DNA of 63,588 nt, counting the filler, from Octopus bimaculoides (Eukaryota), in NCBI RefSeq assembly GCF_001194135.2. It is 7 parts of 7 records of this genome, joined end to end, with 100 filler letters (N's around TTAATTAATTAA, not from the genome) between each part and the next. Parts side by side here need not be neighbours in the genome. Positions count along the whole stretch, not along the records: positions 1 to 29,643 come from NC_068982.1; 6 more parts are not named here. The stretch is one strand, 5' to 3'. A model generated the notes under the pieces. That model ran no database searches. It saw only the letters and a program-made list of their open reading frames with translations, and had not been told where the DNA came from. The translations under genes and the position numbers were made by a program. Shown here one piece after another: positions 13,567-26,835 of this stretch (position 1 is the first letter of the stretch; every line of letters starts with the position of its first letter).

Positions 13567-16133
13567 NNNNNNNNNNNNNNNNNNNNNNNNNNNNNNNNNN
13601 NNNNNNNNNNNNNNNNNNNNNNNNNNNNNNNNNNNNNNNNNNNNNNNNNNNNNNNNNNNNNNNNNNNNNNNNNNNNNNNNNNNNNNNNNNNNNNNNNNNN
13701 NNNNNNNNNNNNNNNNNNNNNNNNNNNNNNNNNNNNNNNNNNNNNNNNNNNNNNNNNNNNNNNNNNNNNNNNNNNNNNNNNNNNNNNNNNNNNNNNNNNN
13801 NNNNNNNNNNNNNNNNNNNNNNNNNNNNNNNNNNNNNNNNNNNNNNNNNNNNNNNNNNNNNNNNNNNNNNNNNNNNNNNNNNNNNNNNNNNNNNNNNNNN
13901 NNNNNNNNNNNNNNNNNNNNNNNNNNNNNNNNNNNNNNNNNNNNNNNNNNNNNNNNNNNNNNNNNNNNNNNNNNNNNNNNNNNNNNNNNNNNNNNNNNNN
14001 NNNNNNNNNNNNNNNNNNNNNNNNNNNNNNNNNNNNNNNNNNNNNNNNNNNNNNNNNNNNNNNNNNNNNNNNNNNNNNNNNNNNNNNNNNNNNNNNNNNN
14101 NNNNNNNNNNNNNNNNNNNNNNNNNNNNNNNNNNNNNNNNNNNNNNNNNNNNNNNNNNNNNNNNNNNNNNNNNNNNNNNNNNNNNNNNNNNNNNNNNNNN
14201 NNNNNNNNNNNNNNNNNNNNNNNNNNNAACTTTAGTATTTAATTCTTTGAAAATAGAGAGGATTTTTCGAAAACGTCAATTAATTGATCTAACTGTTGTT
14301 ATCTCTTTTGCTGTTGTTTTTCGAATTTAAAGACGCCAGAGGGAATTTTTATCTACTGACCGAAAAAATTATATCAACTAATCGAACTTGCTCTCAACAC
14401 ACACTATCATATGTTTAAAACTCACTTTATTTGGATTTAATAAGCAGAATCCTCTGAGATACTTTCCCTCTGTCATGTTACCGTATATGTGTACGTGTGT
14501 TTGTGTGTCTGTGTGTGCGTGTGTGTGTATGTGTGTGTATGCTAACGTACATAGAAAAAGGGAGATAAACAGATGGAGGGGTATTGATATAGACATATAT
14601 TGTACATACACACACACATGCACACAAACACACACGCACACATACATACATATATGTATACATATATCTGTATGTATGTATATCACACAACTGTTCCAGT
14701 CGAAGCCTACTGGTTATATAAATTCTCAACAGCCTGCCTAACACACAGACACACGCGCACTTCACATGCATGCGTACTTATTCACAGAAGATTATTGTTT
14801 TCGGGACATGTTATCAATTTCTTTTAATTATTACTTGGTTGATATATTTACTTATGCGTTAATTCGACATGGATTGTTTTTATTTTCATCCCGTAACACA
14901 CTGACTCACATTTACATAAAGTTTTTCTACCTGTCTTCTTATTTTGTACCAAGTCGTCTATACAATATTCATGTTGTCCATTTTAAATAGACATATTTTT
15001 CTGACAACGAACCAAATTATTTAATCTAAGCCTCTAGGTATTTCATAGAGCATATTCATTTAACTCCCCACCCAACCCCAACCCCATCTCTTTTCTAGTC
15101 CTACTGCCATTGCTACCGCAACAAGTTTCCTTACAGTTAACATCAGCTTCGTGATTTCTGTCATCAATAGTTCTCAATGATATGTTATTTCAAGTTTATT
15201 GCTTTGATAAATGGCATTTGTTTTTTTTTTTATTTTTCGTTTTTTTTTGTTTATTTTGTTTTTTTGCTAATGGAATAAATATCTATTTATGATTAAACGT
15301 TCGATTCTTCAATTCTTTGAGTACATTTCTGCACTGTCTGATATTCTAAGAACAAATTTCCTCTAGGAATATGCAAAGTTAAGTATAAGCATATTAATTA
15401 AGCATTAACATTTTATCACCTAACAATACAGCTGTAAATACTTCTAGGTGGTGTATATTTTCGGATATCGGGCATATAGTCAAACAGAAGGAACATTTGA
15501 ATGATAATGGTCTGAATATTTGATTTACTGTGGTCATACAGGAGCAGCATTTTCACTGTTGTACTCAAATCTGTAATTTTGCGGCCTAACTGTGTGTAGC
15601 GCAGTTGGTTACATGTGAACACTAGTTTTCTCATAACACAATAGTCAATATATATTTGATATTATTGAAACTGTCAATATTATGTTCGTCGAATATATCC
15701 TATAAGGTTACTGTCAGTGAAATAAATAACCCTAATTAAAATTAATCCTATTCACTGTCAATTAAAAAAAAAAAAGGTCTCAAAACTGAACACATTCTAC
15801 AGTAAACAGGCTTCTTGAAGTAGTGCAGTGTAAGGTTGAAAAGAGTACGGACATTACGTAAGTGATGAATTTTCCTGTTGCTAGCAGTATTATTTTCAAA
15901 TTCTCCTGCATTTTATCAAGTGAGAATATGAGTCATAATGAATCTAAATTATGTGATTATGCCCTAGCCTACCCTCCATCCTTTATATACTGCTACCACA
16001 ACAACAAGTGAAGCCATCTGTGGTTTTGTTCTTCTCACTGATATCATCAACATTATAATGATATTAATGTGAGCTCTCAGGGTTTTTAAAAATTAAAATG
16101 TAACTTTTTCGTAATCATGTTTATCTTCTTCAG

Positions 16134-16345
16134 ATCCATTTTTGTTGGTGATGGAATTTTGTGAAAACGGCACTCTGGTAAATTACCTACGAAACCATCG
16201 ACCTGATGGAGCTCAAATAGGGGACGATCCGAACAATACAGGTGACGAATCACCACCTGGATTAACCGTATCGATTACAATCAGAGATTTACTTTCTTTT
16301 TCGTGGCAAATAGCCAAGGGCATGGAATATCTAGACGATATGAAG
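16134..16345 (+). CDS. Exon of RET/FGFR-class receptor tyrosine (pseudo)kinase: hinge, kinase insert, alphaE (equivalent to RET exon 14)
   Basis: Acceptor ttatcttcttcag|AT, donor AAG|gtaagc, 212 nt, phase 1 to phase 0. Translates xPFLLVMEFCENGTLVNYLRNHRP...ITIRDLLSFSWQIAKGMEYLDDMK; compare RET [24 protein letters not shown]. Confidence 0.93.
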
Positions 16346-17120
16346 GTAAGCACTTTACTAAAAAACATTCTATCCAATATACTAAGGCTTCCCGTCTAAA
16401 GATAATTTTTATCACTTTTCTCTTCTTTATGCACAGTATTAAATGTTGCAAAGGAGGATGTATGTTCCACGAACATATTTGTGGTAAATAGCTTATTAAT
16501 TATGAGAGAGAAAGTAATAGTTGTCCCCGAACTTGATAGACTAATACACTAAGACAAATCTATTACTTTATCTACTATATTATTCTGTCTAGTTAACGAG
16601 ATCGACACAATTATCTATCATATGTCAAGGTTAAGTTTAAAATGTCATTTCATGTCTTTTTTTCCCTTTAAGTTGCAACAAGATGATAAAATGCAGAGTC
16701 TCAGTAAAACATTACACAGGACTTTATAAAGTAACTAAGAATCCTCACTGTCTTATTTATACGCATAAGTTATATTAAGGATAGATTAAAGAATATCAAT
16801 TTATTCTGATATGGTCGCAATAATAATCAACAACGTAAAGAAAAAGACTGAACAGTGTGACAAATACAATAAATCCGACTGTCATACTATCTGACATTTC
16901 ATTAACTACTACATATAGGAATTTTCAGTATGGACCTCTTCATGGCACGGACATGCTATATCTAAAAGAATGAATCTGTAGATCATGCGTAATCGTTATA
17001 TCATTTAGCTACATGTTACGTCTCGTTTAGACATGAATTGAAGTTAAATACTACCAGTACATCATCAAAAAGGGCATGAACTATCAAAACTTAAGCAAAT
17101 ATTTTCCAAAATTTGATAGA

Positions 17121-17275
17121 AGTAGCTGTGTGGTAAGTAGCTTGCTTAACAACCACATGGTTCTGGGTTCAGTCCCACTGCGTGGCACCTTGTGCAAGTG
17201 TCTTCTACTATAGCATCAGGCCGACCAAAGCCTTGTGAGTGGGTTTGGTAGAGGGAAACTGAAAGAAGCCCGTCG

Positions 17276-17347
<72 letters not shown>

Positions 17348-17550
17348 TGCGTCTGTGTTTGTCTCCCCACACCATCGCTTGACAACCGATGTTGGTGTGT
17401 TTACGTCCCCGTAACTTAGCGGTTCAGCAAAAGAGTCCGATAGAATAAGTACTAGGCTTACAAAAAATAAGGGGTCTATTTCTTCGACTAAAGGCGGTGC
17501 TCCAGCATGGCCGCAGCCAAGATGACTGAAACAAATAAAAAAATAAAAGA
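17121..17550 (+). mobile_element. Full-length tRNA-derived SINE (family B) with an internal (AT)n(GT)n microsatellite
   Basis: A-box-like tagctgtgtggtaag, B-box-like ggttcagtccc, then caccttgtgcaagt..., microsatellite 17276-17345, 3' part ...ggcggtgctccagcatggccgcag...gaaacaaataaaa. Other copies or halves: 29745-30015(+), 31400-31570(+), 55360-55580(-), 62240-62670(-), 63345-63530(-). Confidence 0.85.
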
Positions 17551-17699
17551 AAACCATTTCGTCAAGGATAATTCCTTGCATGGGTACAACCCATTGAATG
17601 AAACCAGTAAAGGCACCAGCTAAATGCATGAAGTGTTACACTGCATTGCTGAACTCATGTAATTAAACATCCCCTAATAGAGACAAGGAAACCTCTATT

Positions 17700-18010
17700 A
17701 TGTCCCTCATGTTGAATCTGATCGTCGGAGGCCATCTGTGACTGGTGAAATTGATGCTGTTAATGTTACGTTTAAACTGTTGCGATTCAACATTAGCAGG
17801 AAAGACAGGGACAACGAAGAGGTACGGGAAAATAGCTGATCTGGAGAGAAAGAACTGAGCATAGGGGTAGCATGGAGCCTGCGGGTGGATACAGGCAGGG
17901 TGACAAGAAATGGAGAAACGAGTGGATGGCATGTGCATAAATGGAAGAAGTACAAAACCAAGCAGCTCCGAGAAATAGAAGGCATTATAATAGGGGGTAG
18001 AAAACCAGCC
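17700..18010 (+). mobile_element. Highly decayed LINE (RTE-like) 3' fragment
   Basis: LRFNISRKDRDNEEVRE resembles the RTE C-terminal RILGISxxDRIxNEEIR; multiple stops. Confidence 0.4.
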
Positions 18011-18269
18011 AGTTTCGAAGTACCTGCTACATAAATTAGAGACAACTTTAAATAAAGTCTCTAATTTATTAATGTACACTAAGTTTGCAATTCGAATTCC
18101 TTTCCCTGTGTGCCTTTTCGATCACTGCTGATCGGTGCTAAGCAAAATCAAGACTAACAAGAACAACAACTAATGCTATCTTATTGAGGAATATGTACAT
18201 TCAATCAATCTGCATACCGATTCGGAAGTAAGTACATATTAAAATAATTAGGTCATTAAAATAATTGTG

Positions 18270-18587
18270 CAGCTCCCGGCGAACAGTTTTTGTGTAAACA
18301 GGGTTCTCGAGGTGGTCATTAAGCTCTGCAGTAATTTTGGGAGCTGTACTTTTGTGATCCTTTCTAACAATTCGTGTAAGAGTCTGATGGTCCCTATCCG
18401 TATGTTTTGGTTTTCTTCCGGAATTTTGTTCCGGCGAGGAGGGTTTTCCATCTTTCTCAAAGGCTGTCATTACTTTCGAGACAGTACTTCTTGATACACC
18501 AAACATTTCGGCTGTTTTCGTTACGCTAGCGCCTGCCATACGAGCACCAACAATTTGACCTCTTTGAAAGTCCGATAGATCTGTCAT
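18270..18587 (-). mobile_element. Tc1 transposase N-terminal (paired/HTH) fragment, truncated
   Basis: MTDLSDFQRGQIVGARMAGASVTKTAEMFGVSRSTVSKVM...SGRKPK...LTRIVRKDHKSTAPKITAELNDHLENPVYTKTVRRELH; no DDE domain follows. Confidence 0.9.
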
Positions 18588-19129
18588 TTTAATGAATTTT
18601 AATTACCTTTTTCTGATGATATCTGAAAAGAAACAGCAATTTTAGCAAAACATATTAAGCAACACTAATAATAAATTTTTAAAAATGTATACATACATAC
18701 ATACATACATAAATACACATACATACATACATGCATACATATATGCACATATACACATTCGCATCACAAAAGCATATAAATATAATAAATATATATATAT
18801 ATATCCCTTTGTTTGTGTACAGTATGTGTTGTCTTTGTCGTTGAGTTGTTATTATTAGTTACTTGCCCAATCTGACAGAGCTAGCCTATTATCATCAAAA
18901 GTGTTTCAGCTATGCCCATCCAATTTTATTTTATGACACATTGTATTTAGAACTACACCATTTAATTATGTCATGTCTAGTGTAAGATGGTCGTCTGTGA
19001 TTTTGTAGAGATTTGGCTATTATTTTTAGCAGTTACCTCATTAGGTTCATATACCTGTAGTTTCTAATAGTGGTCAATGCAGGCATGGTTCGAACATAAC
19101 AGTTGCTGCTTATCTACAATATTTTTAGG

Positions 19130-19360
19130 TGAGCTGGCAGAATCGTTAGCACGCCGAGCAAAATGCTTAGCGGTATTTCGTCTGCCGCTACGTTCTGAAC
19201 TCAAATTCCGCCGAGATCGACTTTGCCTTTCATCCTTTCGGAGTCGATTAAATAAGTACCAGTTACGCACTGGGATCGATGTAATCGACTTAATCCCTTT
19301 GTCTGTCCTTGTTTGTCCCCTCCATGTTTATCCCCCCTCCCGTGGGCAATAAAGAAATAA
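19130..19360 (+). mobile_element. tRNA-derived SINE (family A)
   Basis: ggtgagctggcagaatcgttagcacgcc...ttctgaactcaaattccgccgagatcgactttgcctttcatcctttcgg...aagtaccagt. The same family occurs at 21505-21700(+), 22560-22777(-), 23570-23700(-, old), 27165-27370(+), 29380-29540(-), 32888-33097(+), 41690-41850(-) and 44780-44950(-). Confidence 0.88.
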
Positions 19361-19514
19361 ATATTTGTTGATGATACGTGCCCCAATACAAGGTTGTCGA
19401 CTAATGAGTTCATTAACTAATACTTAATTGCTGTGTTAAGAAGTCTAGAATTTTCATTAGAAATATTTTTGTTGATTACATACTGTAAAAATTATTCATC
19501 CTATGTGGTTGTGT

Positions 19515-19560
<46 letters not shown>

Positions 19561-19613
19561 ACGCGCGTGCACGTGTGCGTGCGTGTGTATGTGTGTGTCT
19601 ATGTATGTGTATA

Positions 19614-19679
<66 letters not shown>

Positions 19680-21710
19680 CCATATGGAAGATATTAACAT
19701 GTTACATTATATATCTTAAAATATTTATAAGTACACATTTTCCCAATAAATGTGATTACATTCCTTTCCGTATATTTAATAACATCGGCTGTATTACACG
19801 ACATTTTAATCCATGAATCCCCGCCCAAGGTCCAATCAAATTATTTAGGCGTGTATGTGATTTTTTCTATATTCATCTGGATTAATGAGTTGTATAATTT
19901 TGTAAAGTCGGTGAAATAGTGATGTTTTGGCATTCATTTTAGATATAACTGTATATTTGAGAGCTATTGAGCATGTAGCATGAAAGATAGTCTTTGTGAG
20001 ATTGATAGTTTTTGTGAGAACGGATGATGGTCCTCAGATAAATAGATGATCTTGAATTTGTTTCGTTACGTACATGGTAAGCATGTATGATCTATACGTA
20101 GTTCGTGATGATGTAAAATGTTCGTTTTGTTTATAAATTTGTTGGATGGACAATAGTGAACCATGCAGGATTGTTATAATGTTTTTTGGGTATAATACAT
20201 CTTCACTAATGATGTTTCCTTGTGTAACCAAATGTTATGTATATGAATGTTTTTAATGTGTTTGTGCTTCGTTCCGCCTCTTTTTTTTTTAGTCAATGCA
20301 TAGTATGAATGTCGGAAAAGGGTTTGCATATAATTTCTTGTTTATTTGCTTGTTACATTTCATGATGAATGTTATGGCCGGTTATATCTGGTGTTTATTA
20401 GTGTTGCTAGCAAAAAGGAGCAACTGTGGAATCGAAATGTGCTTCCCCAAGCTGCCATTGAAGTTTTGTCTGGTTACTGTGATCTATTAATAGTCTTAGG
20501 GTCTACTAAACCAAATTTTCCTCTAACCACGCCTTAATGTGTTAAGAAGAAAAACTAAAACACAACGAATTATTTAATTCAGAACTTAAGCTAGCAGAAA
20601 GTTGGGACGTTCATGGCTAAAATGCCGATTTAACGATAAAATTTGACACAGAAGACAGCCAATTCGTTAGTATAATACAAAGCATAGTCGTGTGTTTGTG
20701 CGTTTGTGCGCGTGCATGTGCGTGTATGTGTGTATACATATATGTTTGTATGTATTTATAATGAACGTGAGCAATAGCTTTGTATACATAGTGTGTAAAT
20801 TACCTGAATATAAAAGTTAATTTGCAACAATTTATATTCTAAGCGGTTGAATTTCATACTATGTCAGTATTAAAAGAAACGATATAAGAAACCATGTATC
20901 ATCTTCACATTTTATGATCGATATTTATTTGACGGAGACTGATATTCCTGTAATCTAATTTCCTCATAGTAAAATCAGGTAAGTTAACAGACACTTTGTT
21001 TACAGGTCAGATACTGCACCACACAATTTTAACATGTGACCTCTGTAAAAGTACTTATCTCGTTGTTTTGTAGTTCTCTCTTATATTACGGTATTTAATG
21101 GAGCATAACAAAATTCTCTTCTTGCCACGTAGGACTTCCTAGCAAAACTTTTTCACTCTTATGTATTATGGACATCAATCACCATTTAAATAACTTTGTA
21201 ACCTATTCGTTTTTATGGTTGAAAAACGTTACTGCTAGACGTTACTTTTGCCATCAACTAAATGTATAAAATACTGGAAAACTGGAAAAAATACATAATG
21301 CTTTGGAAAAAACACGCAATAACCATATTTCTAGTGATAAAATCAGCCATTTTTATACATTCTTGTCTTGTTTACATCATAACATACAAACGTTTCAACC
21401 GAAACAGAAGTGCTGGTACACCATTCATATCTTTTTTGGTCTGGTAATGAATGTGCAACACAAACAACTATGTTCCAGATTTTGTAATATATATTGTACG
21501 GAGGGTTGGCAGCTACCAAAATCGTTAGTACGCCAGGTAAAATCCACAGCGGCATTTCATCCGTCTTTACGTTCTGATTTCAAATCCCGGCGAGATCGAC
21601 TTTGCCTTTCATCCATTCAGGGTCGATAAAATAAGCACCAGTCGAGCACCGGGGTCGATATAATCGACTTACCCTCACATCCGAGATTGCTGGCCGTGCA
21701 AAAAGATTTG

Positions 21711-21741
<31 letters not shown>

Positions 21742-21835
21742 NNNNNNNNNNNNNNNNNNNNNNNNNNNNNNNNNNNNNNNNNNNNNNNNNNNNNNNNNNN
21801 NNNNNNNNNNNNNNNNNNNNNNNNNNNNNNNNNNN

Positions 21836-21892
<57 letters not shown>

Positions 21893-22559
21893 AAATAATT
21901 GAGATTCAGATCAATTAGGTACTTGAGGCATCAAAAATTAGTGCGGAATTATCCGTACAGTTTCAAAATAAGGTGAATAAATCAAAATAAACAACAGAAC
22001 ATCCTGAGGTGAAGCAGTACAATCGTTTCAAGCGACACCATTTAATTGAACAATGCAATCATTACATCAATTTAAATGCAGAGCTAACCTCAGCTGCATA
22101 AATAAATAAATAAATAAATAGAATTAATTTAATCAGTCGGACACGTTTGTATAATTTTACCTAAATCCACTAACAGGGTAAGAAGACAAAGTCCATGCTG
22201 TATTCACTTCAGCTTAGAAGCTACTAAGACATCAGGAAAAAACTTGTTAGAGATCTAGCTTGTCACTGATTTTTGGGTCGGTTTTAATTTATAGTCTTGT
22301 TTATCAAATCTTTGTATATCAAAAACTAAGACCAAAGAGCATTGTCTGTTAGGAAAAAGCCTGAGGGAGTTGACAGAATCATAGTGGGTATAGTCATAAA
22401 ACTTATCAAGATTAATTTGAAGTAGTATAAAGAAACTGTCTATAATGAGGTTTGGTAAAGGAAGCTCTTAAATCGAGATGTTAGTTACCAGTTAAAGGGG
22501 CAAGATTCTATGCGCGAAAATGTTTTAGTTGAATAAAAGCTAATACTTTGACTTAAAAA

Positions 22560-22777
22560 TATCCTTTTCTACTCTAGGCACAAGGCCTGAAATTTTGTAG
22601 GGAGGGGCCAGTCGATTAGATCTACCTCAGTACGCAACTGGTACTTAATTTTTCGACCCCGAAAGGATGAAAGGCAAAGTCGACCTCGGTGGAATTTGAA
22701 CTCAGAGCGTTAAGACAGACGAAATACCGCTAAGCATTTCACCCGGCGTGCTAACGTGTCTGCCAGCTCGCCGCCTT
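22560..22777 (-). mobile_element. Family A SINE with a 13-bp target-site duplication
   Basis: tttgacttaaaaa at 22547-22559 and 22778-22790; ~100 nt upstream of the RTK catalytic exon. Confidence 0.88.
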
Positions 22778-22880
22778 TTTGACTTAAAAAATTTCGCTGT
22801 ATAGAAATTTTTTGCAAAAAACTGTTATATGTATATTGTTTTTATTATGTAAAAGAATTAGATTTAATTTCCTTTTTCAG

Positions 22881-23009
22881 CTGGTACATGGCGACCTGTC
22901 AGCCCGTAATATTTTGGTCAGTAGTGGAGGAGTTATTAAAATATTTAATCTCAGACCTCCAGACGTTCTTGCTGCCCAACTTGCAACTATCACTGGGAAA
23001 ACATACAAG
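22881..23009 (+). CDS. RTK exon with catalytic loop and activation segment (equivalent to RET exon 15), degenerate motifs
   Basis: cctttttcag|CTG ... AAG|gtaagg, 129 nt, phase 0/0. LVHGDLSARNILVSSGGVIKIFNLRPPDVLAAQLATITGKTYK; joins the previous exon as MK|LVH, as in RET. Confidence 0.92.
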
Positions 23010-25376
23010 GTAAGGAAGTATCATTCACAAATCACCAAATGTTAATATTATGGTAGTTATTGACACGGATACGAATGATGAAAATATAGATGTTAGTTTA
23101 CTAAATTTTATTAATGTTTTTATCAAAGATGCACAAATATATATGGTACTAACATTATTAATACATAGTTAAAAATTCTGTTATTTTTCATTGAAATGCA
23201 TTTTTAAAATGTAAAACATTCACATGTAAGTAGAAATTATAACAATTATAACATAGGGCTGACTCACAACTGTGTTGCCATTAATAAACACATATGAATT
23301 CAAACAATGAACTGCATATTATCACTAACTAATGAGTTCTAACTGTAAATTGCTTTAACATTGATTTACAAATACTATCAATTACAATGTTCATTTTAGA
23401 TTTTATTATTTCTTTGTTGGTTTCAGTCAATAGATTGTGGCCTTTAAGAATTGTTGTCGCGTATAACTGCTCAATCCTAAATCTAATGCTTATTTACGTT
23501 TTTTTTTTTTTATATGAAGTTGTATATAATGTTATTGTTCCAAGAACATAACACTTGTATCACATTTAAATGGACTGATACTTGATTTATCGATCACAAA
23601 ATGATGAAACGCAAAATTGATCTCGGTGCTATTTAAAAATCAGAGCATAGAGCACCAGAGCAAATACTGCACGAGATTTTTCTCGGTGCCTCAAGACTCT
23701 ACTGGTCTACATGTAGCCTGTTTGCTAGATTCACATTAACTAACACAAACCAAATATATTTTTGGTAGCAGCAAGACGAATGACGTTATTTCACCAGGTT
23801 CAATTCTTGAACTATGATTCATTGAATTAGATAGAGTAAAGTAATTGGCAGAAGCGATAGTGAGGCGTATGTGTCGCAATCATATTTACTTTATAACCCT
23901 TAGGCTTTGCGCCTCTTTAAGTAATCAATACTTTTGATTTGGCCGAATTTTTACACGCATTCATTCATATACATGAAAACATACACAAGAGTGTATGCGC
24001 GCGTGTGTGTGTGTGTGTGTGTGTGCGTACGTATAATATTCATATAAAGATATGCAAATGTTTTTTAAAAAATACGAAGAATAAATAATAATTGAATACA
24101 AATACGTAGTTTAACATTTTAATCCTCTACGGAACCTGTCGATTGACAGACACTCTGAAGTTCTGTAACATTATCTTGGTTGATTGCCAGATAAGCTGTC
24201 AGTTCAGTTGAAAGTTTAAGAAAGGAAATTAACCAAAAGCATTTAGAGAGAAAATAGAAAGCGAAAAAGAAGAGAAGAAAAACATTTTTTCGTTTAATTT
24301 TTATGTAAAACTAATTTTAAATTAGTTATTTATAATATGAAATAGTTTATACAAAGATCAGTGTATGAGAGTTCCGGCAACAAAGGCATCAGGAAACTTT
24401 ATGTCTATTTTTAAGACAGCTGGTTGAATGGTAACATCTTCAACCATATTTTCTTCGTCTATACAAAATAATTGTTGTTTTTGTTAAGTTAGTTGAATGA
24501 ATGAGACCATTACCCATAATTTTTGGAAGATTCTGATAGACTTGTAAGATTGTTGCAGTTGATAGCTTAAACGTTGATACGTCAGTATTTGCAAGAATCC
24601 AAGAAGTCTGCAGTGTTGAGAAAAAAGGTTTGGGTGAATATTTTACTACAGGATTAAAGGATAAAACAAGCAAGGATGACATGGGAAAGAGGAGCGATGA
24701 ATGTGCAGAAATAGAATGAGGGGGAAAGGCTATTGTATTAGCGACAAAAGTGGCCAAAATAGTTGAAGAGTGTTGGTGATCGAATCGGTCAAGAAGTCGA
24801 ACGGCCTGCTTTGGACGTTGTTTATGATATTAGTATGAGCACTACACTGATATAGATCCAGCTTGGGCTTAGTGGAAAGTCTACAACTGTTCATAAGGGA
24901 AGTTTTTCATGGTTCACACACACACACACACACACAGCGTGTGTATAAATTATTAGCGACGGACGGAATAGCATTACCAAAAGGTATTCTTTGTATCCGA
25001 TTTAATATGAATCAGAACACCGAATATTGCGTTATCAGCCTTAAGAGATCCTCTCATAAAAACGTTTGGTGCATAAAATCACACACATAAATTGTAGCAA
25101 ACGAGAATCGCTTATCGTGGATGCTGGAATTCCCATGTCACGTGAGTTCATTCTGCAGAAAATCATCGGGGGGAAGCGTCCGGTCGCCGCATGTCAGTCA
25201 AATCTCGCTGCAAATAACACAGTATTTGTCGTTCTAAGAAACGTCCATGTTAAGTTGGATATAAAGATTACCTTTTAGTATTAGTACTGCCTTCGTCGTT
25301 AACAATTATTGATAAGCCTGCTGATTATTCGCAACATCAGTGACTGAAAAGATGTTGATATTCTGTATAGGTATTA

Positions 25377-25429
<53 letters not shown>

Positions 25430-25934
25430 AAGTATGTATGTCGTTGTTTTGATGTAAGTTATTTCTTACATTTTTTTTACTTTTTCATGATGTAGGGGTT
25501 AATGGCACCTTAAAAGAGATCGTTGTATACTCTCTCTTTCTGACTCTCTCTCCCTACCACCGCTGTCTATTTCTTCTTTAAGTATTGTAGCTTGCCTTCC
25601 TCTTTATGGGAGATATTTCGGTAGAAATTTTGTTTTTCACTATATTTATAGATGATTCTAGTATTTTCATCTGTAATTTCTTGTATACTTACTTACGCTT
25701 TAGATTTATCGATTGCGAATATACACAAGTTTGCTACCATGAAACATCTTTTTATGACATTAAAGACAGAATTATTCAAGACTCTTCGCAAATGCTTTTT
25801 TTCCTTCTGCCTGGATTATAATATCCCAACCCTTTATACAAAAATACATACATACATACTTATGTACATAAATACATGTATGTATATATATGTATATTTA
25901 TATTATGTGTGTGTGTATGGATGGATGGATGAAT

Positions 25935-26002
<68 letters not shown>

Positions 26003-26764
26003 CTACCCTTGGCAAACAGGACACAGTCGTGTGTCGATAAGCCAGCTGGAGGAGATGTCCTCCTGGGGCTAAAAGCAACAGTAACATCCACCCCTAGGGG
26101 TCAGCCACACTTAAGTGGCAATATACTACACTTTATCGTGCAGTTACTGTTAATACTTCATTTAGAGAATTAACATTGCTTGTTTTCACCTTTTCGATAT
26201 CAGTGAAGAATTTCACTTGAAAAGAAGATATATATATATATATATACATATATATATGTATAATATATATGTATGTCAGACATTATTCAGTCTTATTTCA
26301 AGATTTTTTGCCAATAGAGAAAGAGCCAGTTTCTAACCTAGATCCAAGGCTCCTTCATTGGAATTTCCACATCAACAAAACGGTATTTTTGTTTGTATGT
26401 ATGTACAAGTGCAAATTTGTATGCTTTTTATGTATGTATTCTCATACATATAGTTGCATACCTAGACATGCTCATATATATTTAAATGATAAATTTCTGG
26501 AAAGATTTACAAATTTTTACAGTTCCAGTGATGGATTGGATCCGTAGTCTTCGAATTAGCTGGTTTTTAGAAGCCTAATTTCTCATGATTGCTATGTATG
26601 TATGTATGTATGTATGTATGTATGTATGTATGTATTCATTCTCCAGCCAACATTGAGTTTGATTTTAAATATTTTAACTTTGACTGCCATTCTGGTTATT
26701 AGAACTGTTCTTTTCCTGCAGTAAAGGAAACCATTTCAACTTAATTCGTGTTTTTTTTTTCTAG

Positions 26765-26835
26765 AGCTTTGCATCTATAAAATGGATGGATCCAAATATA
26801 ATTTGGTCACAAATGATTACAACTAAAAGTGATGT
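26765..26835 (+). CDS. RTK exon, subdomain VIII-IX (equivalent to RET exon 16); not in the ORF track
   Basis: Poly-T then ctag|AGC ... GAT GT|gtaagt, 71 nt. SFASIKWMDPNIIWSQMITTKSDV aligns to RET [24 protein letters not shown], which is also a 71-nt exon ending in phase 2. Confidence 0.88.

What the first reader, a model, noticed from the sequence alone, without database searches (positions are those of the whole stretch)
16134..26835. RET-architecture receptor with pseudokinase hallmarks, echoing vertebrate STYK1
The three exons are intact and in frame, with canonical splice sites and no stops, which suggests a maintained gene. Yet HRD->HGD, LAARN->LSARN, DFG->NLR and W-M-A-x-E->WMDPN, while the catalytic Asp/Asn and alphaF SDVW are kept. 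From recall, the vertebrate pseudokinase STYK1/NOK also has HGD and lacks DFG, so this is either convergence or an unrecognised invertebrate scaffold-type RTK.
Basis: partly seen in the sequence, partly recalled or inferred. Interest (0 to 1): 0.72.

Follow-up and report, generated by a model that had tools for sequence, protein, structure and literature searches.

The report
Octopus RET-derived receptor pseudokinase gene
These three exons belong to an expressed Octopus vulgaris gene, a second copy of the RET growth-factor receptor whose kinase active site is degraded yet kept almost unchanged across distant cephalopods, so it probably signals without catalysis.

Summary
Three + strand exons (16134-16345, 22881-23009, 26765-26835) have canonical splice sites. 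They encode residues 855-992 of the annotated 1174-aa Octopus vulgaris protein "Ret-like" (CAI9717068.1), at 100% identity. The N gap lies inside an intron, between microsatellites, and interrupts no reading frame.

The full protein has RET architecture: cadherin-like region, RET cysteine-rich domain, transmembrane helix, tyrosine-kinase domain and tail. Octopus and Argonauta also carry a canonical RET (GEGEFG, VAVK, HRD, DFG, APE) on the same chromosome or scaffold, so this gene is a paralogue.

The paralogue keeps K758, E775, D874 and N879 (human RET numbering). It has R873G, D892N, G894 deleted, R897P, Y900L, Y905A and E921N; F893L holds in the octopods only. R873, F893, R897 and E921 are sites where single Hirschsprung mutations abolish human RET kinase activity.

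These changes are shared by O. vulgaris, O. sinensis, O. bimaculoides, Argonauta and a distant cephalopod known only from a transcript. Synonymous sites are saturated while pN is 0.08. The kinase domain is as conserved as that of canonical RET (97% and 91%).

It is a maintained receptor pseudokinase, convergent with STYK1 and HER3 and not related to STYK1. I found no paper describing it. Loss of catalysis and the way it signals are inferred, not shown.

The parts
16134..16345 (+). Exon A (212 bp; equivalent to human RET exon 14). It encodes the hinge, kinase insert and alphaD-alphaE: (D)PFLLVMEFCENG...SFSWQIAKGMEYLDDMK. The gatekeeper is Met (human V804 position).
   Evidence: Same length and same splice sites in L001, L002 and L003. 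Against L001, pS 0.73 and pN 0.10; against L002, dN/dS 0.05. 100% match to P0003 and P0159.
16346..22880 (+). Intron between exons A and B (6.5 kb). It holds microsatellites, a Tc1-like transposase remnant, SINE-like repeats and the assembly gap.
   Evidence: GT...AG boundaries. Repeats. Not alignable to the orthologous intron of L001.
21742..21835 (.). Assembly gap (94 N) inside the A-B intron, between an (AT)n and an (AC)n(AT)n microsatellite. It does not touch coding sequence.
   Evidence: The A|B junction is contiguous in transcript L004 and in all orthologous proteins.
22881..23009 (+). Exon B (129 bp; equivalent to human RET exon 15, 123 bp). It encodes the catalytic loop and the start of the activation segment: LVHGDLSARNILVSSGGVIKIFNLRPPDVLAAQLATITGKTYK. 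Changes are HRD>HGD (GGC 22890-22892), DFG Asp>Asn (AAT 22947-22949), Gly deleted, and both activation-loop Tyr lost.
   Evidence: Against L004, pN 0.096 with pS 0.78, which is saturated.
23010..26764 (+). Intron between exons B and C (3.8 kb).
   Evidence: gtaagg...ttctag boundaries.
26765..26835 (+). Exon C (71 bp, the same length as human RET exon 16). It encodes the P+1 loop and APE region to the start of alphaF: SFASIKWMDPNIIWSQMITTKSD + GT, a split Val codon. APE>DPN (26789-26797).
   Evidence: Zero non-synonymous against 8 synonymous differences to L004.

Best explanation
The three exons are the central kinase-domain exons of a roughly 286-kb Octopus vulgaris gene. The gene encodes a full-length type I receptor that is a paralogue of RET; I call it psiRET here. 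It has a signal peptide, cadherin-like domains, a RET cysteine-rich domain, a transmembrane helix, a juxtamembrane segment, a tyrosine-kinase fold and a C-terminal tail.

After a RET duplication, this copy went through a burst of substitutions concentrated in the catalytic loop and activation segment. The duplication happened at or before the common ancestor of Octopus, Argonauta and a more distant cephalopod. The substitutions removed the Mg-binding DFG aspartate (D892N, plus loss of the Gly), the HRD arginine, both activation-loop autophosphorylation tyrosines and the APE glutamate. The ATP-site Lys-Glu pair, the catalytic Asp and Asn, and the overall fold were kept.

Since then the domain has been frozen by purifying selection as strong as that on the canonical RET kinase.

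Most likely mechanism (inferred): psiRET cannot phosphorylate efficiently. It works like HER3 or other receptor pseudokinases, as a ligand-engaged partner that dimerises with a catalytically competent kinase. The linked canonical RET is the obvious candidate. psiRET would be phosphorylated in trans on its conserved docking tyrosines: juxtamembrane SDYVEE, GYLDLE (the human Y1015 motif), and V-x-N-x-(L/V)-Y, which resembles human I-E-N-K-L-Y1062. It may also allosterically support its partner.

Shown: anatomy, paralogy, motif states, conservation and transcription. Inferred: loss of catalysis, the partner and trans-phosphorylation.
For: Identity and architecture.
- 100% match to CAI9717068.1, with orthologues in O. 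sinensis, O. bimaculoides and Argonauta hians.
- Pfam RET_CRD 1.2e-28, PK_Tyr 7.8e-72, cadherin 27.6 bits.
- Best solved-structure matches for single kinase domains are human RET, 3e-69 against FGFR at about 1e-60. A construct with two EGFR kinase copies ranks first overall, on a doubled score.
- The ectodomain matches RET ectodomain structures (7aml, 4.9e-25).

Paralogy.
- Canonical RETs with intact motifs exist in O. vulgaris (P0187, same 215.6-Mb chromosome) and in Argonauta (P0013, same 30.2-Mb scaffold).
- NJ tree: psiRET clade 100%; psiRET inside the mollusc RET clade 96%.

Motif states.
- 27 of 103 positions invariant in 12 canonical RETs are changed in all psiRETs.
- 16 of the 30 invariant positions in residues 872-928 are changed, against 11 of 73 elsewhere (Fisher p=1.4e-4).

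Selection.
- Window exons against transcript L004: pS 0.73 (saturated) and pN 0.082. Exon C has 0 non-synonymous against 8 synonymous differences.
- Introns cannot be aligned to L001, while exon A is 78% identical at the nucleotide level.
- psiRET kinase-domain identity is 97.0% and 90.6%, against 96.9% and 90.8% for canonical RET. The psiRET tail is more conserved (91% and 64%) than the canonical tail (80% and 44%).

Transcription.
- L004 is an intronless 3.7-kb contig with the complete ORF.
- L006 and L007 are transcript contigs from two further runs.
Against: - No biochemical data. K758, E775, D874 and N879 are all retained, and Argonauta even keeps a GxGxxG loop. Residual or unconventional activity (as reported for HER3, CASK and JAK2 JH2) or ATP binding cannot be excluded.
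- No evidence here that psiRET and canonical RET are co-expressed or dimerise.
- The ectodomains are only 29% identical, so the two receptors may not share ligands.
- The structure prediction failed (pLDDT 38.5), so fold integrity rests on sequence alone.
- The sister relation to cephalopod canonical RET has only 54% bootstrap support and two exclusive shared residues, so the date of the duplication is loose.
- The distant species (SRR8281666) could not be named.
Confidence: 0.6

Rival explanations
1. Natural dominant-negative or decoy receptor. psiRET binds the same ligand and co-receptor complexes as canonical RET and forms unproductive heterodimers, which damps RET signalling.
For: A kinase-deficient human or mouse RET (S811F/S812F) blocks wild-type RET in trans (PMC10242352). 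psiRET keeps a complete RET-type ectodomain and transmembrane helix and lacks both activation-loop tyrosines.
Against: A decoy needs only the ectodomain and transmembrane helix. Here the kinase domain and tail are the most conserved parts (97% and 91%, against 68% for the ectodomain between Octopus and Argonauta). Docking motifs (YLDL, NxxY) are also conserved. That points to an intracellular function beyond blocking. The ectodomain is only 29% identical to canonical RET.
Confidence: 0.2
2. An atypical but active tyrosine kinase. Catalysis would persist through the retained Lys, Glu, catalytic Asp and Asn, with Asn or another residue replacing the DFG Asp. The gene would then be a divergent RET, not a pseudokinase.
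For: K758, E775, D874 and N879 are retained in all species. HGD with an intact DFG occurs in otherwise canonical RTKs, so R873G need not be disabling. Conservation of the ATP-site residues suggests that nucleotide binding still matters.
Against: The DFG Asp is lost and the Gly deleted, with two prolines directly after. Changes at F893 (octopods), R897 and E921 match positions where single mutations abolish RET activity. The APE Glu and both activation-loop Tyr are lost. By the standard sequence definition, absence of the DFG Asp marks a pseudokinase (PMC13259870 and PMC13519141).
Confidence: 0.15
3. A decaying duplicate (pseudogene) or an annotation artefact that happens to be open across three exons.
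For: The catalytic motifs are degenerate. Only three exons can be seen in the window.
Against: Complete ORFs of 1108-1278 aa exist in five species. An intronless transcript carries the full ORF. Synonymous sites are saturated with pN 0.08. Splice sites are conserved in three other loci. The conservation equals that of the active paralogue.
Confidence: 0.01
4. An invertebrate orthologue of STYK1/NOK, or an unrelated scaffold-type RTK family.
For: It lacks DFG, as STYK1 does (GLG).
Against: It has a RET_CRD domain and a RET-like ectodomain, whereas STYK1 has a 22-residue ectodomain. It sits within the RET clade with 96-100% bootstrap support. It keeps the alphaC Glu, where STYK1 has Arg.
Confidence: 0.01

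Closest known systems
Canonical RET receptor tyrosine kinase (human RET; mollusc, hemichordate and cephalopod RET, e.g. O. vulgaris P0187)
   Same: Domain order is the same: cadherin-like region, RET_CRD, transmembrane helix, kinase domain, tail. Kinase-exon sizes are 212/129/71 bp against human exons 14-16 at 215/123/71 bp (the human sizes are from my own knowledge). The kinase insert has the same length. The Y981, Y1015 (YLDL) and Y1062-like NxxY motifs are present. The best structural-sequence match is RET.
   Different: Only 50% kinase-domain and 29% ectodomain identity to the canonical RET of the same species. Substitutions are R873G, A876S, S891F, D892N, G894 deleted, L895R, R897P, Y900L, Y905A, A919D and E921N, with a V804M gatekeeper.
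HER3/ErbB3 (and EphB6, EphA10): pseudokinase paralogues inside otherwise active RTK families
   Same: A catalytically degraded paralogue sits beside active family members, keeps a full ligand-binding ectodomain and has a conserved tail with docking tyrosines. The expected mode of action is heterodimerisation and trans-phosphorylation (PMC13259870).
   Different: HER3 keeps DFG and loses the catalytic Asp (HRN) and the alphaC Glu. psiRET does the reverse: it keeps the catalytic Asp and alphaC Glu and loses the DFG Asp. The origin is independent, in the RET family and in cephalopods. No RET-family member is among the eight human receptor pseudokinases.
STYK1/NOK
   Same: A receptor-type tyrosine pseudokinase without a DFG motif (GLG) and with a variant first G-loop residue (CxGxxG; psiRET has R/G/Q-xGxxG).
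   Different: STYK1 has a 22-residue ectodomain, an alphaC Arg and VILK. psiRET has a roughly 650-residue RET ectodomain and keeps the alphaC Glu. psiRET is phylogenetically a RET. The resemblance is convergent.
Human Hirschsprung loss-of-function RET alleles (R873Q, F893L, R897Q, E921K; dominant-negative S811F)
   Same: The same residues are altered. In the octopods F893L is the identical substitution. The single human mutations are reported to abolish kinase activity (PMC8941195). Kinase-deficient RET acts on wild-type RET in trans (PMC10242352).
   Different: Those are pathogenic alleles of the single human RET gene. psiRET is a separate, fixed and selected paralogue that carries several such changes together.
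BRAF DFG-Asp (D594) kinase-dead mutants that transactivate CRAF (my own knowledge, not checked here)
   Same: The DFG aspartate is lost while the fold is intact, and a dimer partner can be activated allosterically.
   Different: BRAF is a cytosolic Ser/Thr kinase and the mutation is somatic. This is an analogy for mechanism only.

Membership tests
RET receptor family | RET-specific cysteine-rich domain before the transmembrane helix | tested here: met
   Pfam RET_CRD E=1.2e-28, 99.8 bits against a cut-off of 26, residues 512-616 of P0159. It aligns to the CLD4-CRD of RET ectodomain structures 7aml, 4ux8 and 6q2j.
RET receptor family | Cadherin-like domains in the ectodomain | tested here: inconclusive
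   The Pfam Cadherin match at residues 203-274 scores 27.6 bits, just under the 28.8 cut-off. There are weak matches to cadherin-23 and protocadherin structures and to RET CLD (7amk, 0.0025). The canonical cephalopod RET gives no Pfam cadherin hit either.
RET receptor family | Tyrosine-kinase domain closest to RET and placed inside the RET clade | tested here: met
   RET structures score 3e-69, against FGFR at about 1e-60. NJ tree: all RET plus psiRET against FGFR1 100%; mollusc RET plus psiRET 96%. Their numbering was checked against known landmarks.
RET receptor family | Single-pass transmembrane receptor with an N-terminal signal peptide | tested here: inconclusive
   Read from sequence only. 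There is a hydrophobic stretch IVIAVVSGFLCFTYAIILIYCMW followed by basic residues, and a hydrophobic N-terminus in P0159, P0153 and P0154. No transmembrane or signal-peptide predictor was available.
Pseudokinase (sequence definition: lacks at least one of the VAIK Lys, HRD Asp, DFG Asp) | Absence of the DFG aspartate | tested here: met
   D892 is Asn in all four aligned psiRETs (the O. sinensis kinase domain reads identically to O. vulgaris), with G894 deleted. The codon is AAT in both O. vulgaris and L004.
Pseudokinase (sequence definition: lacks at least one of the VAIK Lys, HRD Asp, DFG Asp) | Absence of the VAIK Lys or of the HRD catalytic Asp | tested here: not met
   K758 (VTVK) and D874 (HGD) are retained, as are E775 and N879. 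One missing residue is enough for the definition, but this leaves room for nucleotide binding.
Pseudokinase (functional) | No phosphotransfer activity | not testable with these tools
   This needs a kinase assay. There is indirect support: changes at four residues where single human RET mutations abolish activity.
STYK1/NOK family | Very short ectodomain (22 residues), CxGxxG, alphaC Arg, GLG | tested here: not met
   psiRET has a roughly 650-residue ectodomain with RET_CRD, keeps the alphaC Glu, and reads N-L with the Gly deleted rather than GLG.
Non-functional pseudogene | Stops or frameshifts, dN/dS near 1, no transcript | tested here: not met
   ORFs are intact in five species. pN 0.082 against pS 0.73. 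A transcript contig carries the full ORF.

The most novel reading that the evidence does not exclude
The Asn that replaces the Mg-binding DFG aspartate is encoded by AAT (window 22947-22949) in both O. vulgaris and the distant species. In coleoid cephalopods, which recode neural mRNAs heavily by A-to-I editing, editing of the first A would read as GAT (Asp). That would restore a D-L motif like the DLG of ROR1/2. psiRET would then be a receptor whose catalytic competence is switched on post-transcriptionally in particular tissues. An inverted pair of SINE-like repeats (21511-21725 and 22554-22768) lies just upstream of exon B and could form double-stranded RNA. My evidence does not exclude this, but it does not support it either. 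The one transcript-derived sequence I could confirm (L004) and the second O. vulgaris record QHX41560.1, whose source I did not verify, both read Asn at this site.
Probability: 0.03. Interest if true: 0.85.

Novelty: new member of a known kind. Interest (0 to 1): 0.5.

Why it matters
Receptor tyrosine pseudokinases are a small and much-studied class, with eight in humans. None of them derives from RET. This gene is a RET-derived example that arose independently in cephalopods. It sits beside an intact RET, and selection has held it as tightly as the active enzyme across a divergence deep enough to saturate synonymous sites.

It is a natural experiment on what a RET kinase fold does without catalysis. 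It combines, in one selected protein, changes at the very residues that cause loss of function in human Hirschsprung disease, together with a V804M-type gatekeeper.

It also gives an entry point to RET and GDNF-like signalling in an invertebrate lineage with a large nervous system. For genome annotation, 'Ret' and 'Ret-like' in octopus records cover two functionally different genes.

Tried and rejected
- **More exons in the window.** tblastn with human RET and FGFR1 kinase domains and with the full octopus protein found only the three exons. The N-lobe and the next C-lobe exon lie outside the piece; the gene spans about 286 kb.
- **Word-indexed protein search with the 138-residue peptide.** It gave only two short ORF fragments. 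The exhaustive representative search was needed to find the annotated protein.
- **Structure prediction.** AlphaFold2 on the kinase domain with the six admissible sequences gave pLDDT 38.5 and pTM 0.31. The model is unusable, so no fold search was run. A deeper alignment was not admissible under the tool's input rule, and I did not try to get round it.
- **Chromosomal distance between the two paralogues.** The look-ups return no coordinates when a gene range exceeds 100 kb. Only 'same chromosome or scaffold' can be stated.
- **Naming the distant species.** Run and assembly accessions SRR8281666, SRR11869391 and ERZ21867824 are not found in the paper library. No taxonomic sequence database was available.
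- **STYK1 in the tree.** No STYK1 sequence was obtainable. The recalled HGD of STYK1 could not be confirmed, and a 2026 review table prints HKD.
- **Dating the duplication from shared derived residues.** Only two kinase-domain positions are exclusive to psiRET plus cephalopod canonical RET, and bootstrap support is 54%. This stays unresolved.
- **Non-coding RNA.** The tRNA and Rfam scans of the window found nothing.
- **Transposon remnants.** Pfam on four further long ORFs found nothing.
- **Literature.** Searches for a cephalopod or mollusc RET pseudokinase found nothing relevant.

Full report
**1. The observation**

The window is AT-rich, microsatellite-laden animal DNA. Three + strand segments are open and bounded by canonical splice signals.
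- Exon A, 16134-16345: acceptor ttcttcag|AT, donor AAG|gtaagc.
- Exon B, 22881-23009: acceptor ttttcag|CTG, donor AAG|gtaagg.
- Exon C, 26765-26835: acceptor ttctag|AGC, donor GT|gtaagt.

Spliced together they give 138 residues: (D)PFLLVMEFCENG...MEYLDDMK | LVHGDLSARNILVSSGGVIKIFNLRPPDVLAAQLATITGKTYK | SFASIKWMDPNIIWSQMITTKSD(V). This peptide scores Pfam PK_Tyr_Ser-Thr E=9e-26. Human RET kinase structures match it end to end at 3e-19; a construct with two EGFR kinase copies ranks first on a doubled partial match, and FLT3, PDGFRA and FGFR2 follow closely.

There are two small corrections.
- Exon A is 212 bp and ends at 16345.
- The W of 'SDVW' is not in exon C, nor anywhere in the window. Exon C ends in the split Val codon, and the Trp is in the next exon, which lies outside the piece.

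**2. The gap**

The N run 21742-21835 lies in the intron between exons A and B. It sits between an (AT)13 run and an (AC)16(AT)12 run, which is typical of an assembly break in a microsatellite. No reading frame crosses it. The junction ...DDMK|LVHGD... is contiguous in every orthologous protein and in an intronless transcript contig of another species. Nothing coding is missing there.

**3. What gene this is**

The word-indexed search found only two ORF fragments of exon A from other cephalopod data sets. The exhaustive search found a 1174-aa protein that is 100% identical over all 138 residues, at positions 855-992. It is CAI9717068.1, 'proto-oncogene tyrosine-protein kinase receptor Ret-like [Octopus vulgaris]', on a 215.6-Mb chromosome of GCA_951406725.2. 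The gene spans about 286 kb.

Its 90% cluster also holds:
- a second O. vulgaris record (QHX41560.1, 1176 aa, with a signal-peptide-like N-terminus);
- O. sinensis XP_029655451.2;
- O. bimaculoides XP_014784477.1.

More distant orthologues are:
- Argonauta hians (79% identity);
- a complete 1167-aa ORF on an intronless 3.7-kb Logan contig (L004, run SRR8281666, 64% identity);
- an ectodomain-only ORF from two further runs.

Because the genomic gene is hundreds of kilobases long, an intronless contig with the full ORF is a transcript.

**4. Architecture**

Pfam finds RET_CRD (1.2e-28), a just-sub-threshold cadherin domain, and the kinase domain (7.8e-72). The ectodomain aligns to RET ectodomain structures at equivalent positions. 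Among single kinase domains, the full kinase domain matches RET (3e-69) ahead of FGFRs (about 1e-60).

By eye there is a hydrophobic transmembrane stretch followed by basic residues, a juxtamembrane SDYVEE motif shared with other invertebrate RETs, and a 100-residue tail. The kinase-exon sizes 212/129/71 bp compare with 215/123/71 bp for human RET exons 14-16. The human sizes are from my own knowledge and were not checked here. 'RET architecture' is therefore correct.

**5. It is a paralogue, not the RET orthologue**

Argonauta hians has a second Ret-like protein (P0013) on the same 30.2-Mb scaffold. O. vulgaris has one (P0187, 1013 aa, gene span about 195 kb) on the same chromosome. A third comes from a Logan transcript (P0188). 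These carry fully canonical motifs: GEGEFG, VAVKMLK, HRDLAARN, DFG, two activation-loop tyrosines and APE.

I ran a neighbour-joining tree on 288 ungapped kinase-domain columns with 500 bootstraps.
- The degenerate proteins (psiRET) form a 100% clade on a long stem.
- That clade lies inside a 96% clade of mollusc RETs.
- It is sister to cephalopod canonical RET with only 54% support.
- All RETs separate from FGFR1 at 100%.

Only two kinase-domain positions are exclusive to psiRET plus cephalopod canonical RET. The duplication is therefore securely within RET and older than the Octopus, Argonauta and distant-species divergences, but it is not dated more precisely. Among the best 150 representatives of the exhaustive search, no non-cephalopod protein shows the psiRET motif pattern.

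**6. State of the catalytic machinery**

Numbering is human RET. My typed human sequence reproduces K758, V804, H872-D874, D892, Y900, M918 and Y1015.

Retained in all psiRETs: K758 (VTVK), E775, H872, D874, N879, the second and third G-loop glycines, R969, Y981 and Y1015.

Changed in all psiRETs at positions invariant in 12 canonical RETs from human to molluscs: E732D, E734K, V738L, A743L, A756T, K761R, P785A, V787I, I803V, R873G, A876S, S891F, D892N, G894 deleted, L895R, R897P, Y900L, Y905A, P914S, V915I, A919D, E921N, S922I, L923I, Y928I, G938A, L960I.

Other positions:
- F893 is Leu in the octopods and Phe in the distant species.
- The gatekeeper is Met.
- The first G-loop glycine is Arg in Octopus, Gly in Argonauta and Gln in the distant species.

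The changes cluster in the catalytic loop and activation segment. 16 of 30 invariant positions are changed there, against 11 of 73 elsewhere (Fisher p=1.4e-4).

HGD alone is not diagnostic. Several other RTKs among the hits, including a bee VEGFR1-like protein, combine HGD with an intact DFG.

**7. Is it maintained?**

Yes, by every test available.

*Exon A against other loci.* Against the ENA contig L001, exon A has the same length and splice sites, 78% nucleotide identity, pS 0.73 and pN 0.10, while the flanking introns cannot be aligned at all. Against a closer Octopus-like locus (L002), introns are 87% identical and exon A gives dN/dS 0.05.

*All three exons against transcript L004.* pS is 0.73, which is saturated, and pN is 0.082. 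The exons that carry the degenerate motifs (B plus C) give pN 0.06. Exon C has 0 non-synonymous against 8 synonymous differences. The codon view shows synonymous changes in and around the unchanged H-G-D, F-N, R-P-P and D-P-N residues.

*Protein level.*

| Region | Octopus-Argonauta | Octopus-distant species |
|---|---|---|
| psiRET kinase domain | 97.0% | 90.6% |
| Canonical RET kinase domain | 96.9% | 90.8% |
| psiRET ectodomain | 68.5% | 53.1% |
| psiRET tail | 91% | 64% |
| Canonical RET tail | 80% | 44% |

The pattern is a burst of change on the stem branch followed by stasis. That is the signature of a new, constrained function, not of decay.

**8. How it most likely works**

*Shown:* a complete receptor with a RET-type ectodomain, a kinase fold missing the Mg-binding Asp and the activation-loop tyrosines, and conserved tyrosine motifs. 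The motifs are SDYVEE in the juxtamembrane segment, GYLDLE (the human Y1015 PLC-gamma motif), and V-(Q/E)-N-x-(L/V)-Y-F-Q-Q-K, which has the hydrophobic-x-N-x-x-Y form of human I-E-N-K-L-Y1062. The canonical cephalopod RET has changed YLDL to YLQM, while psiRET keeps it.

*Inferred:* psiRET is catalytically dead or nearly so. It acts as a HER3-like partner that is phosphorylated in trans and recruits adaptors, perhaps also stabilising its partner's active state. The linked canonical RET is the obvious partner.

*Main rival:* a natural dominant-negative receptor, as shown for kinase-deficient RET(S811F) (PMC10242352). The very strong conservation of the kinase domain and tail argues for more than a passive decoy.

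*Second rival:* residual or unconventional catalysis, because the Lys, Glu, catalytic Asp and Asn are all kept.

Pseudogene and STYK1-orthologue readings are rejected (sections 5 and 7).

**9. Comparison with the known, and novelty**

The gene is already annotated, as 'Ret' or 'Ret-like'. The annotation does not distinguish it from the canonical RET next to it. I found no paper describing a RET-family pseudokinase in cephalopods or elsewhere. A 2026 review lists eight human receptor pseudokinases, none from the RET family (PMC13259870).

It is a new member of a known kind: a pseudokinase paralogue within an RTK family. Its inactivation pattern is the inverse of HER3's, since the DFG Asp is lost and the catalytic Asp is kept. 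The STYK1 resemblance is convergent and partial.

**10. Limits**

- Only three of the gene's exons are in the window; everything else rests on database proteins.
The central RET part agrees with the PDB alignment, and the numbering is consistent.
- The tree is distance-based with a single outgroup.
- The structure prediction failed.
- Catalytic inactivity, partner and expression pattern are untested.

Noticed in passing
window 18201-18587 (-): A 128-aa ORF in the A-B intron has Tc1/mariner-type transposase N-terminal helix-turn-helix domains (HTH_23 8.9e-09; HTH_Tnp_Tc3_2 1.9e-05, below its cut-off). It is a transposon remnant inside the intron.
   Followed up: partly
window 19128-19292 (+), 21511-21725 (+), 22554-22772 (-): There are three copies of a 160-215-nt interspersed (SINE-like) repeat in the A-B intron, 73-85% alike. 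The second ends at the (AT)n run next to the assembly gap. The second and third form an inverted pair 828 nt apart, just upstream of exon B, which could fold into double-stranded RNA in the pre-mRNA.
   Followed up: no
window 1144-1208, 8688-9485, 10416-10825, 13567-14227, 21742-21835: All five assembly gaps of the piece lie in introns. Where I looked, they abut TA/CA dinucleotide repeats (translations read YIYIYI or CVCVCV at the edges). The gaps therefore look like microsatellite-induced breaks.
   Followed up: partly
L006 1-2600 and L007 1-2509 (Logan runs SRR27666071 and SRR27666085): In a third, distant species the psiRET transcript contigs run past the juxtamembrane exon into GAG|GTAAGC..., a retained 5' splice site, and stop nine codons after the Glu codon that ends the exon. 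This is either unspliced pre-mRNA or an intronically terminated isoform encoding ectodomain, transmembrane helix and juxtamembrane segment without the kinase domain. It was seen in two independent runs.
   Followed up: partly
P0003 (CAI9717068.1) against P0159 (QHX41560.1), N-termini: The genome annotation of O. vulgaris starts with MGDKERKDHKNELVMNVKLAKEE..., without a hydrophobic signal sequence. The other O. vulgaris record, Argonauta and L004 start with a signal-peptide-like segment. The first exon of CAI9717068.1 is probably mis-annotated. O. sinensis XP_029655451.2 carries about 100 extra N-terminal residues.
   Followed up: no
P0187, P0013 and P0188 against P0159, P0153 and P0154, just after the kinase domain: The canonical cephalopod RETs have changed the conserved YLDL (human Y1015 site) to YLQM, a YxxM motif. 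psiRET keeps YLDL, as do most other invertebrate RETs. The two paralogues may have divided the ancestral docking sites between them.
   Followed up: no
window 16134-16345 (exon A), residue M of LLVMEF: The gatekeeper position (human V804) is Met in all psiRETs. This is the same substitution as the human V804M drug-resistance and MEN2 allele.
   Followed up: no
P0053, P0124, P0145, P0151, P0189 (hits): Several other receptor tyrosine kinases carry HGD instead of HRD together with intact DFG and LAARN motifs, including a bee 'VEGFR1-like' protein. HGD recurs in apparently catalytically intact RTKs.
   Followed up: partly
window 7742-8122 (-): A 126-aa ORF reads to my eye like the C-terminal part of a mariner-type transposase (...IMVFGVITSDSDVMPPFISPHGLRLNTEVYIKCMEEVVLPWIK...), but Pfam gives no match.
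   Followed up: partly
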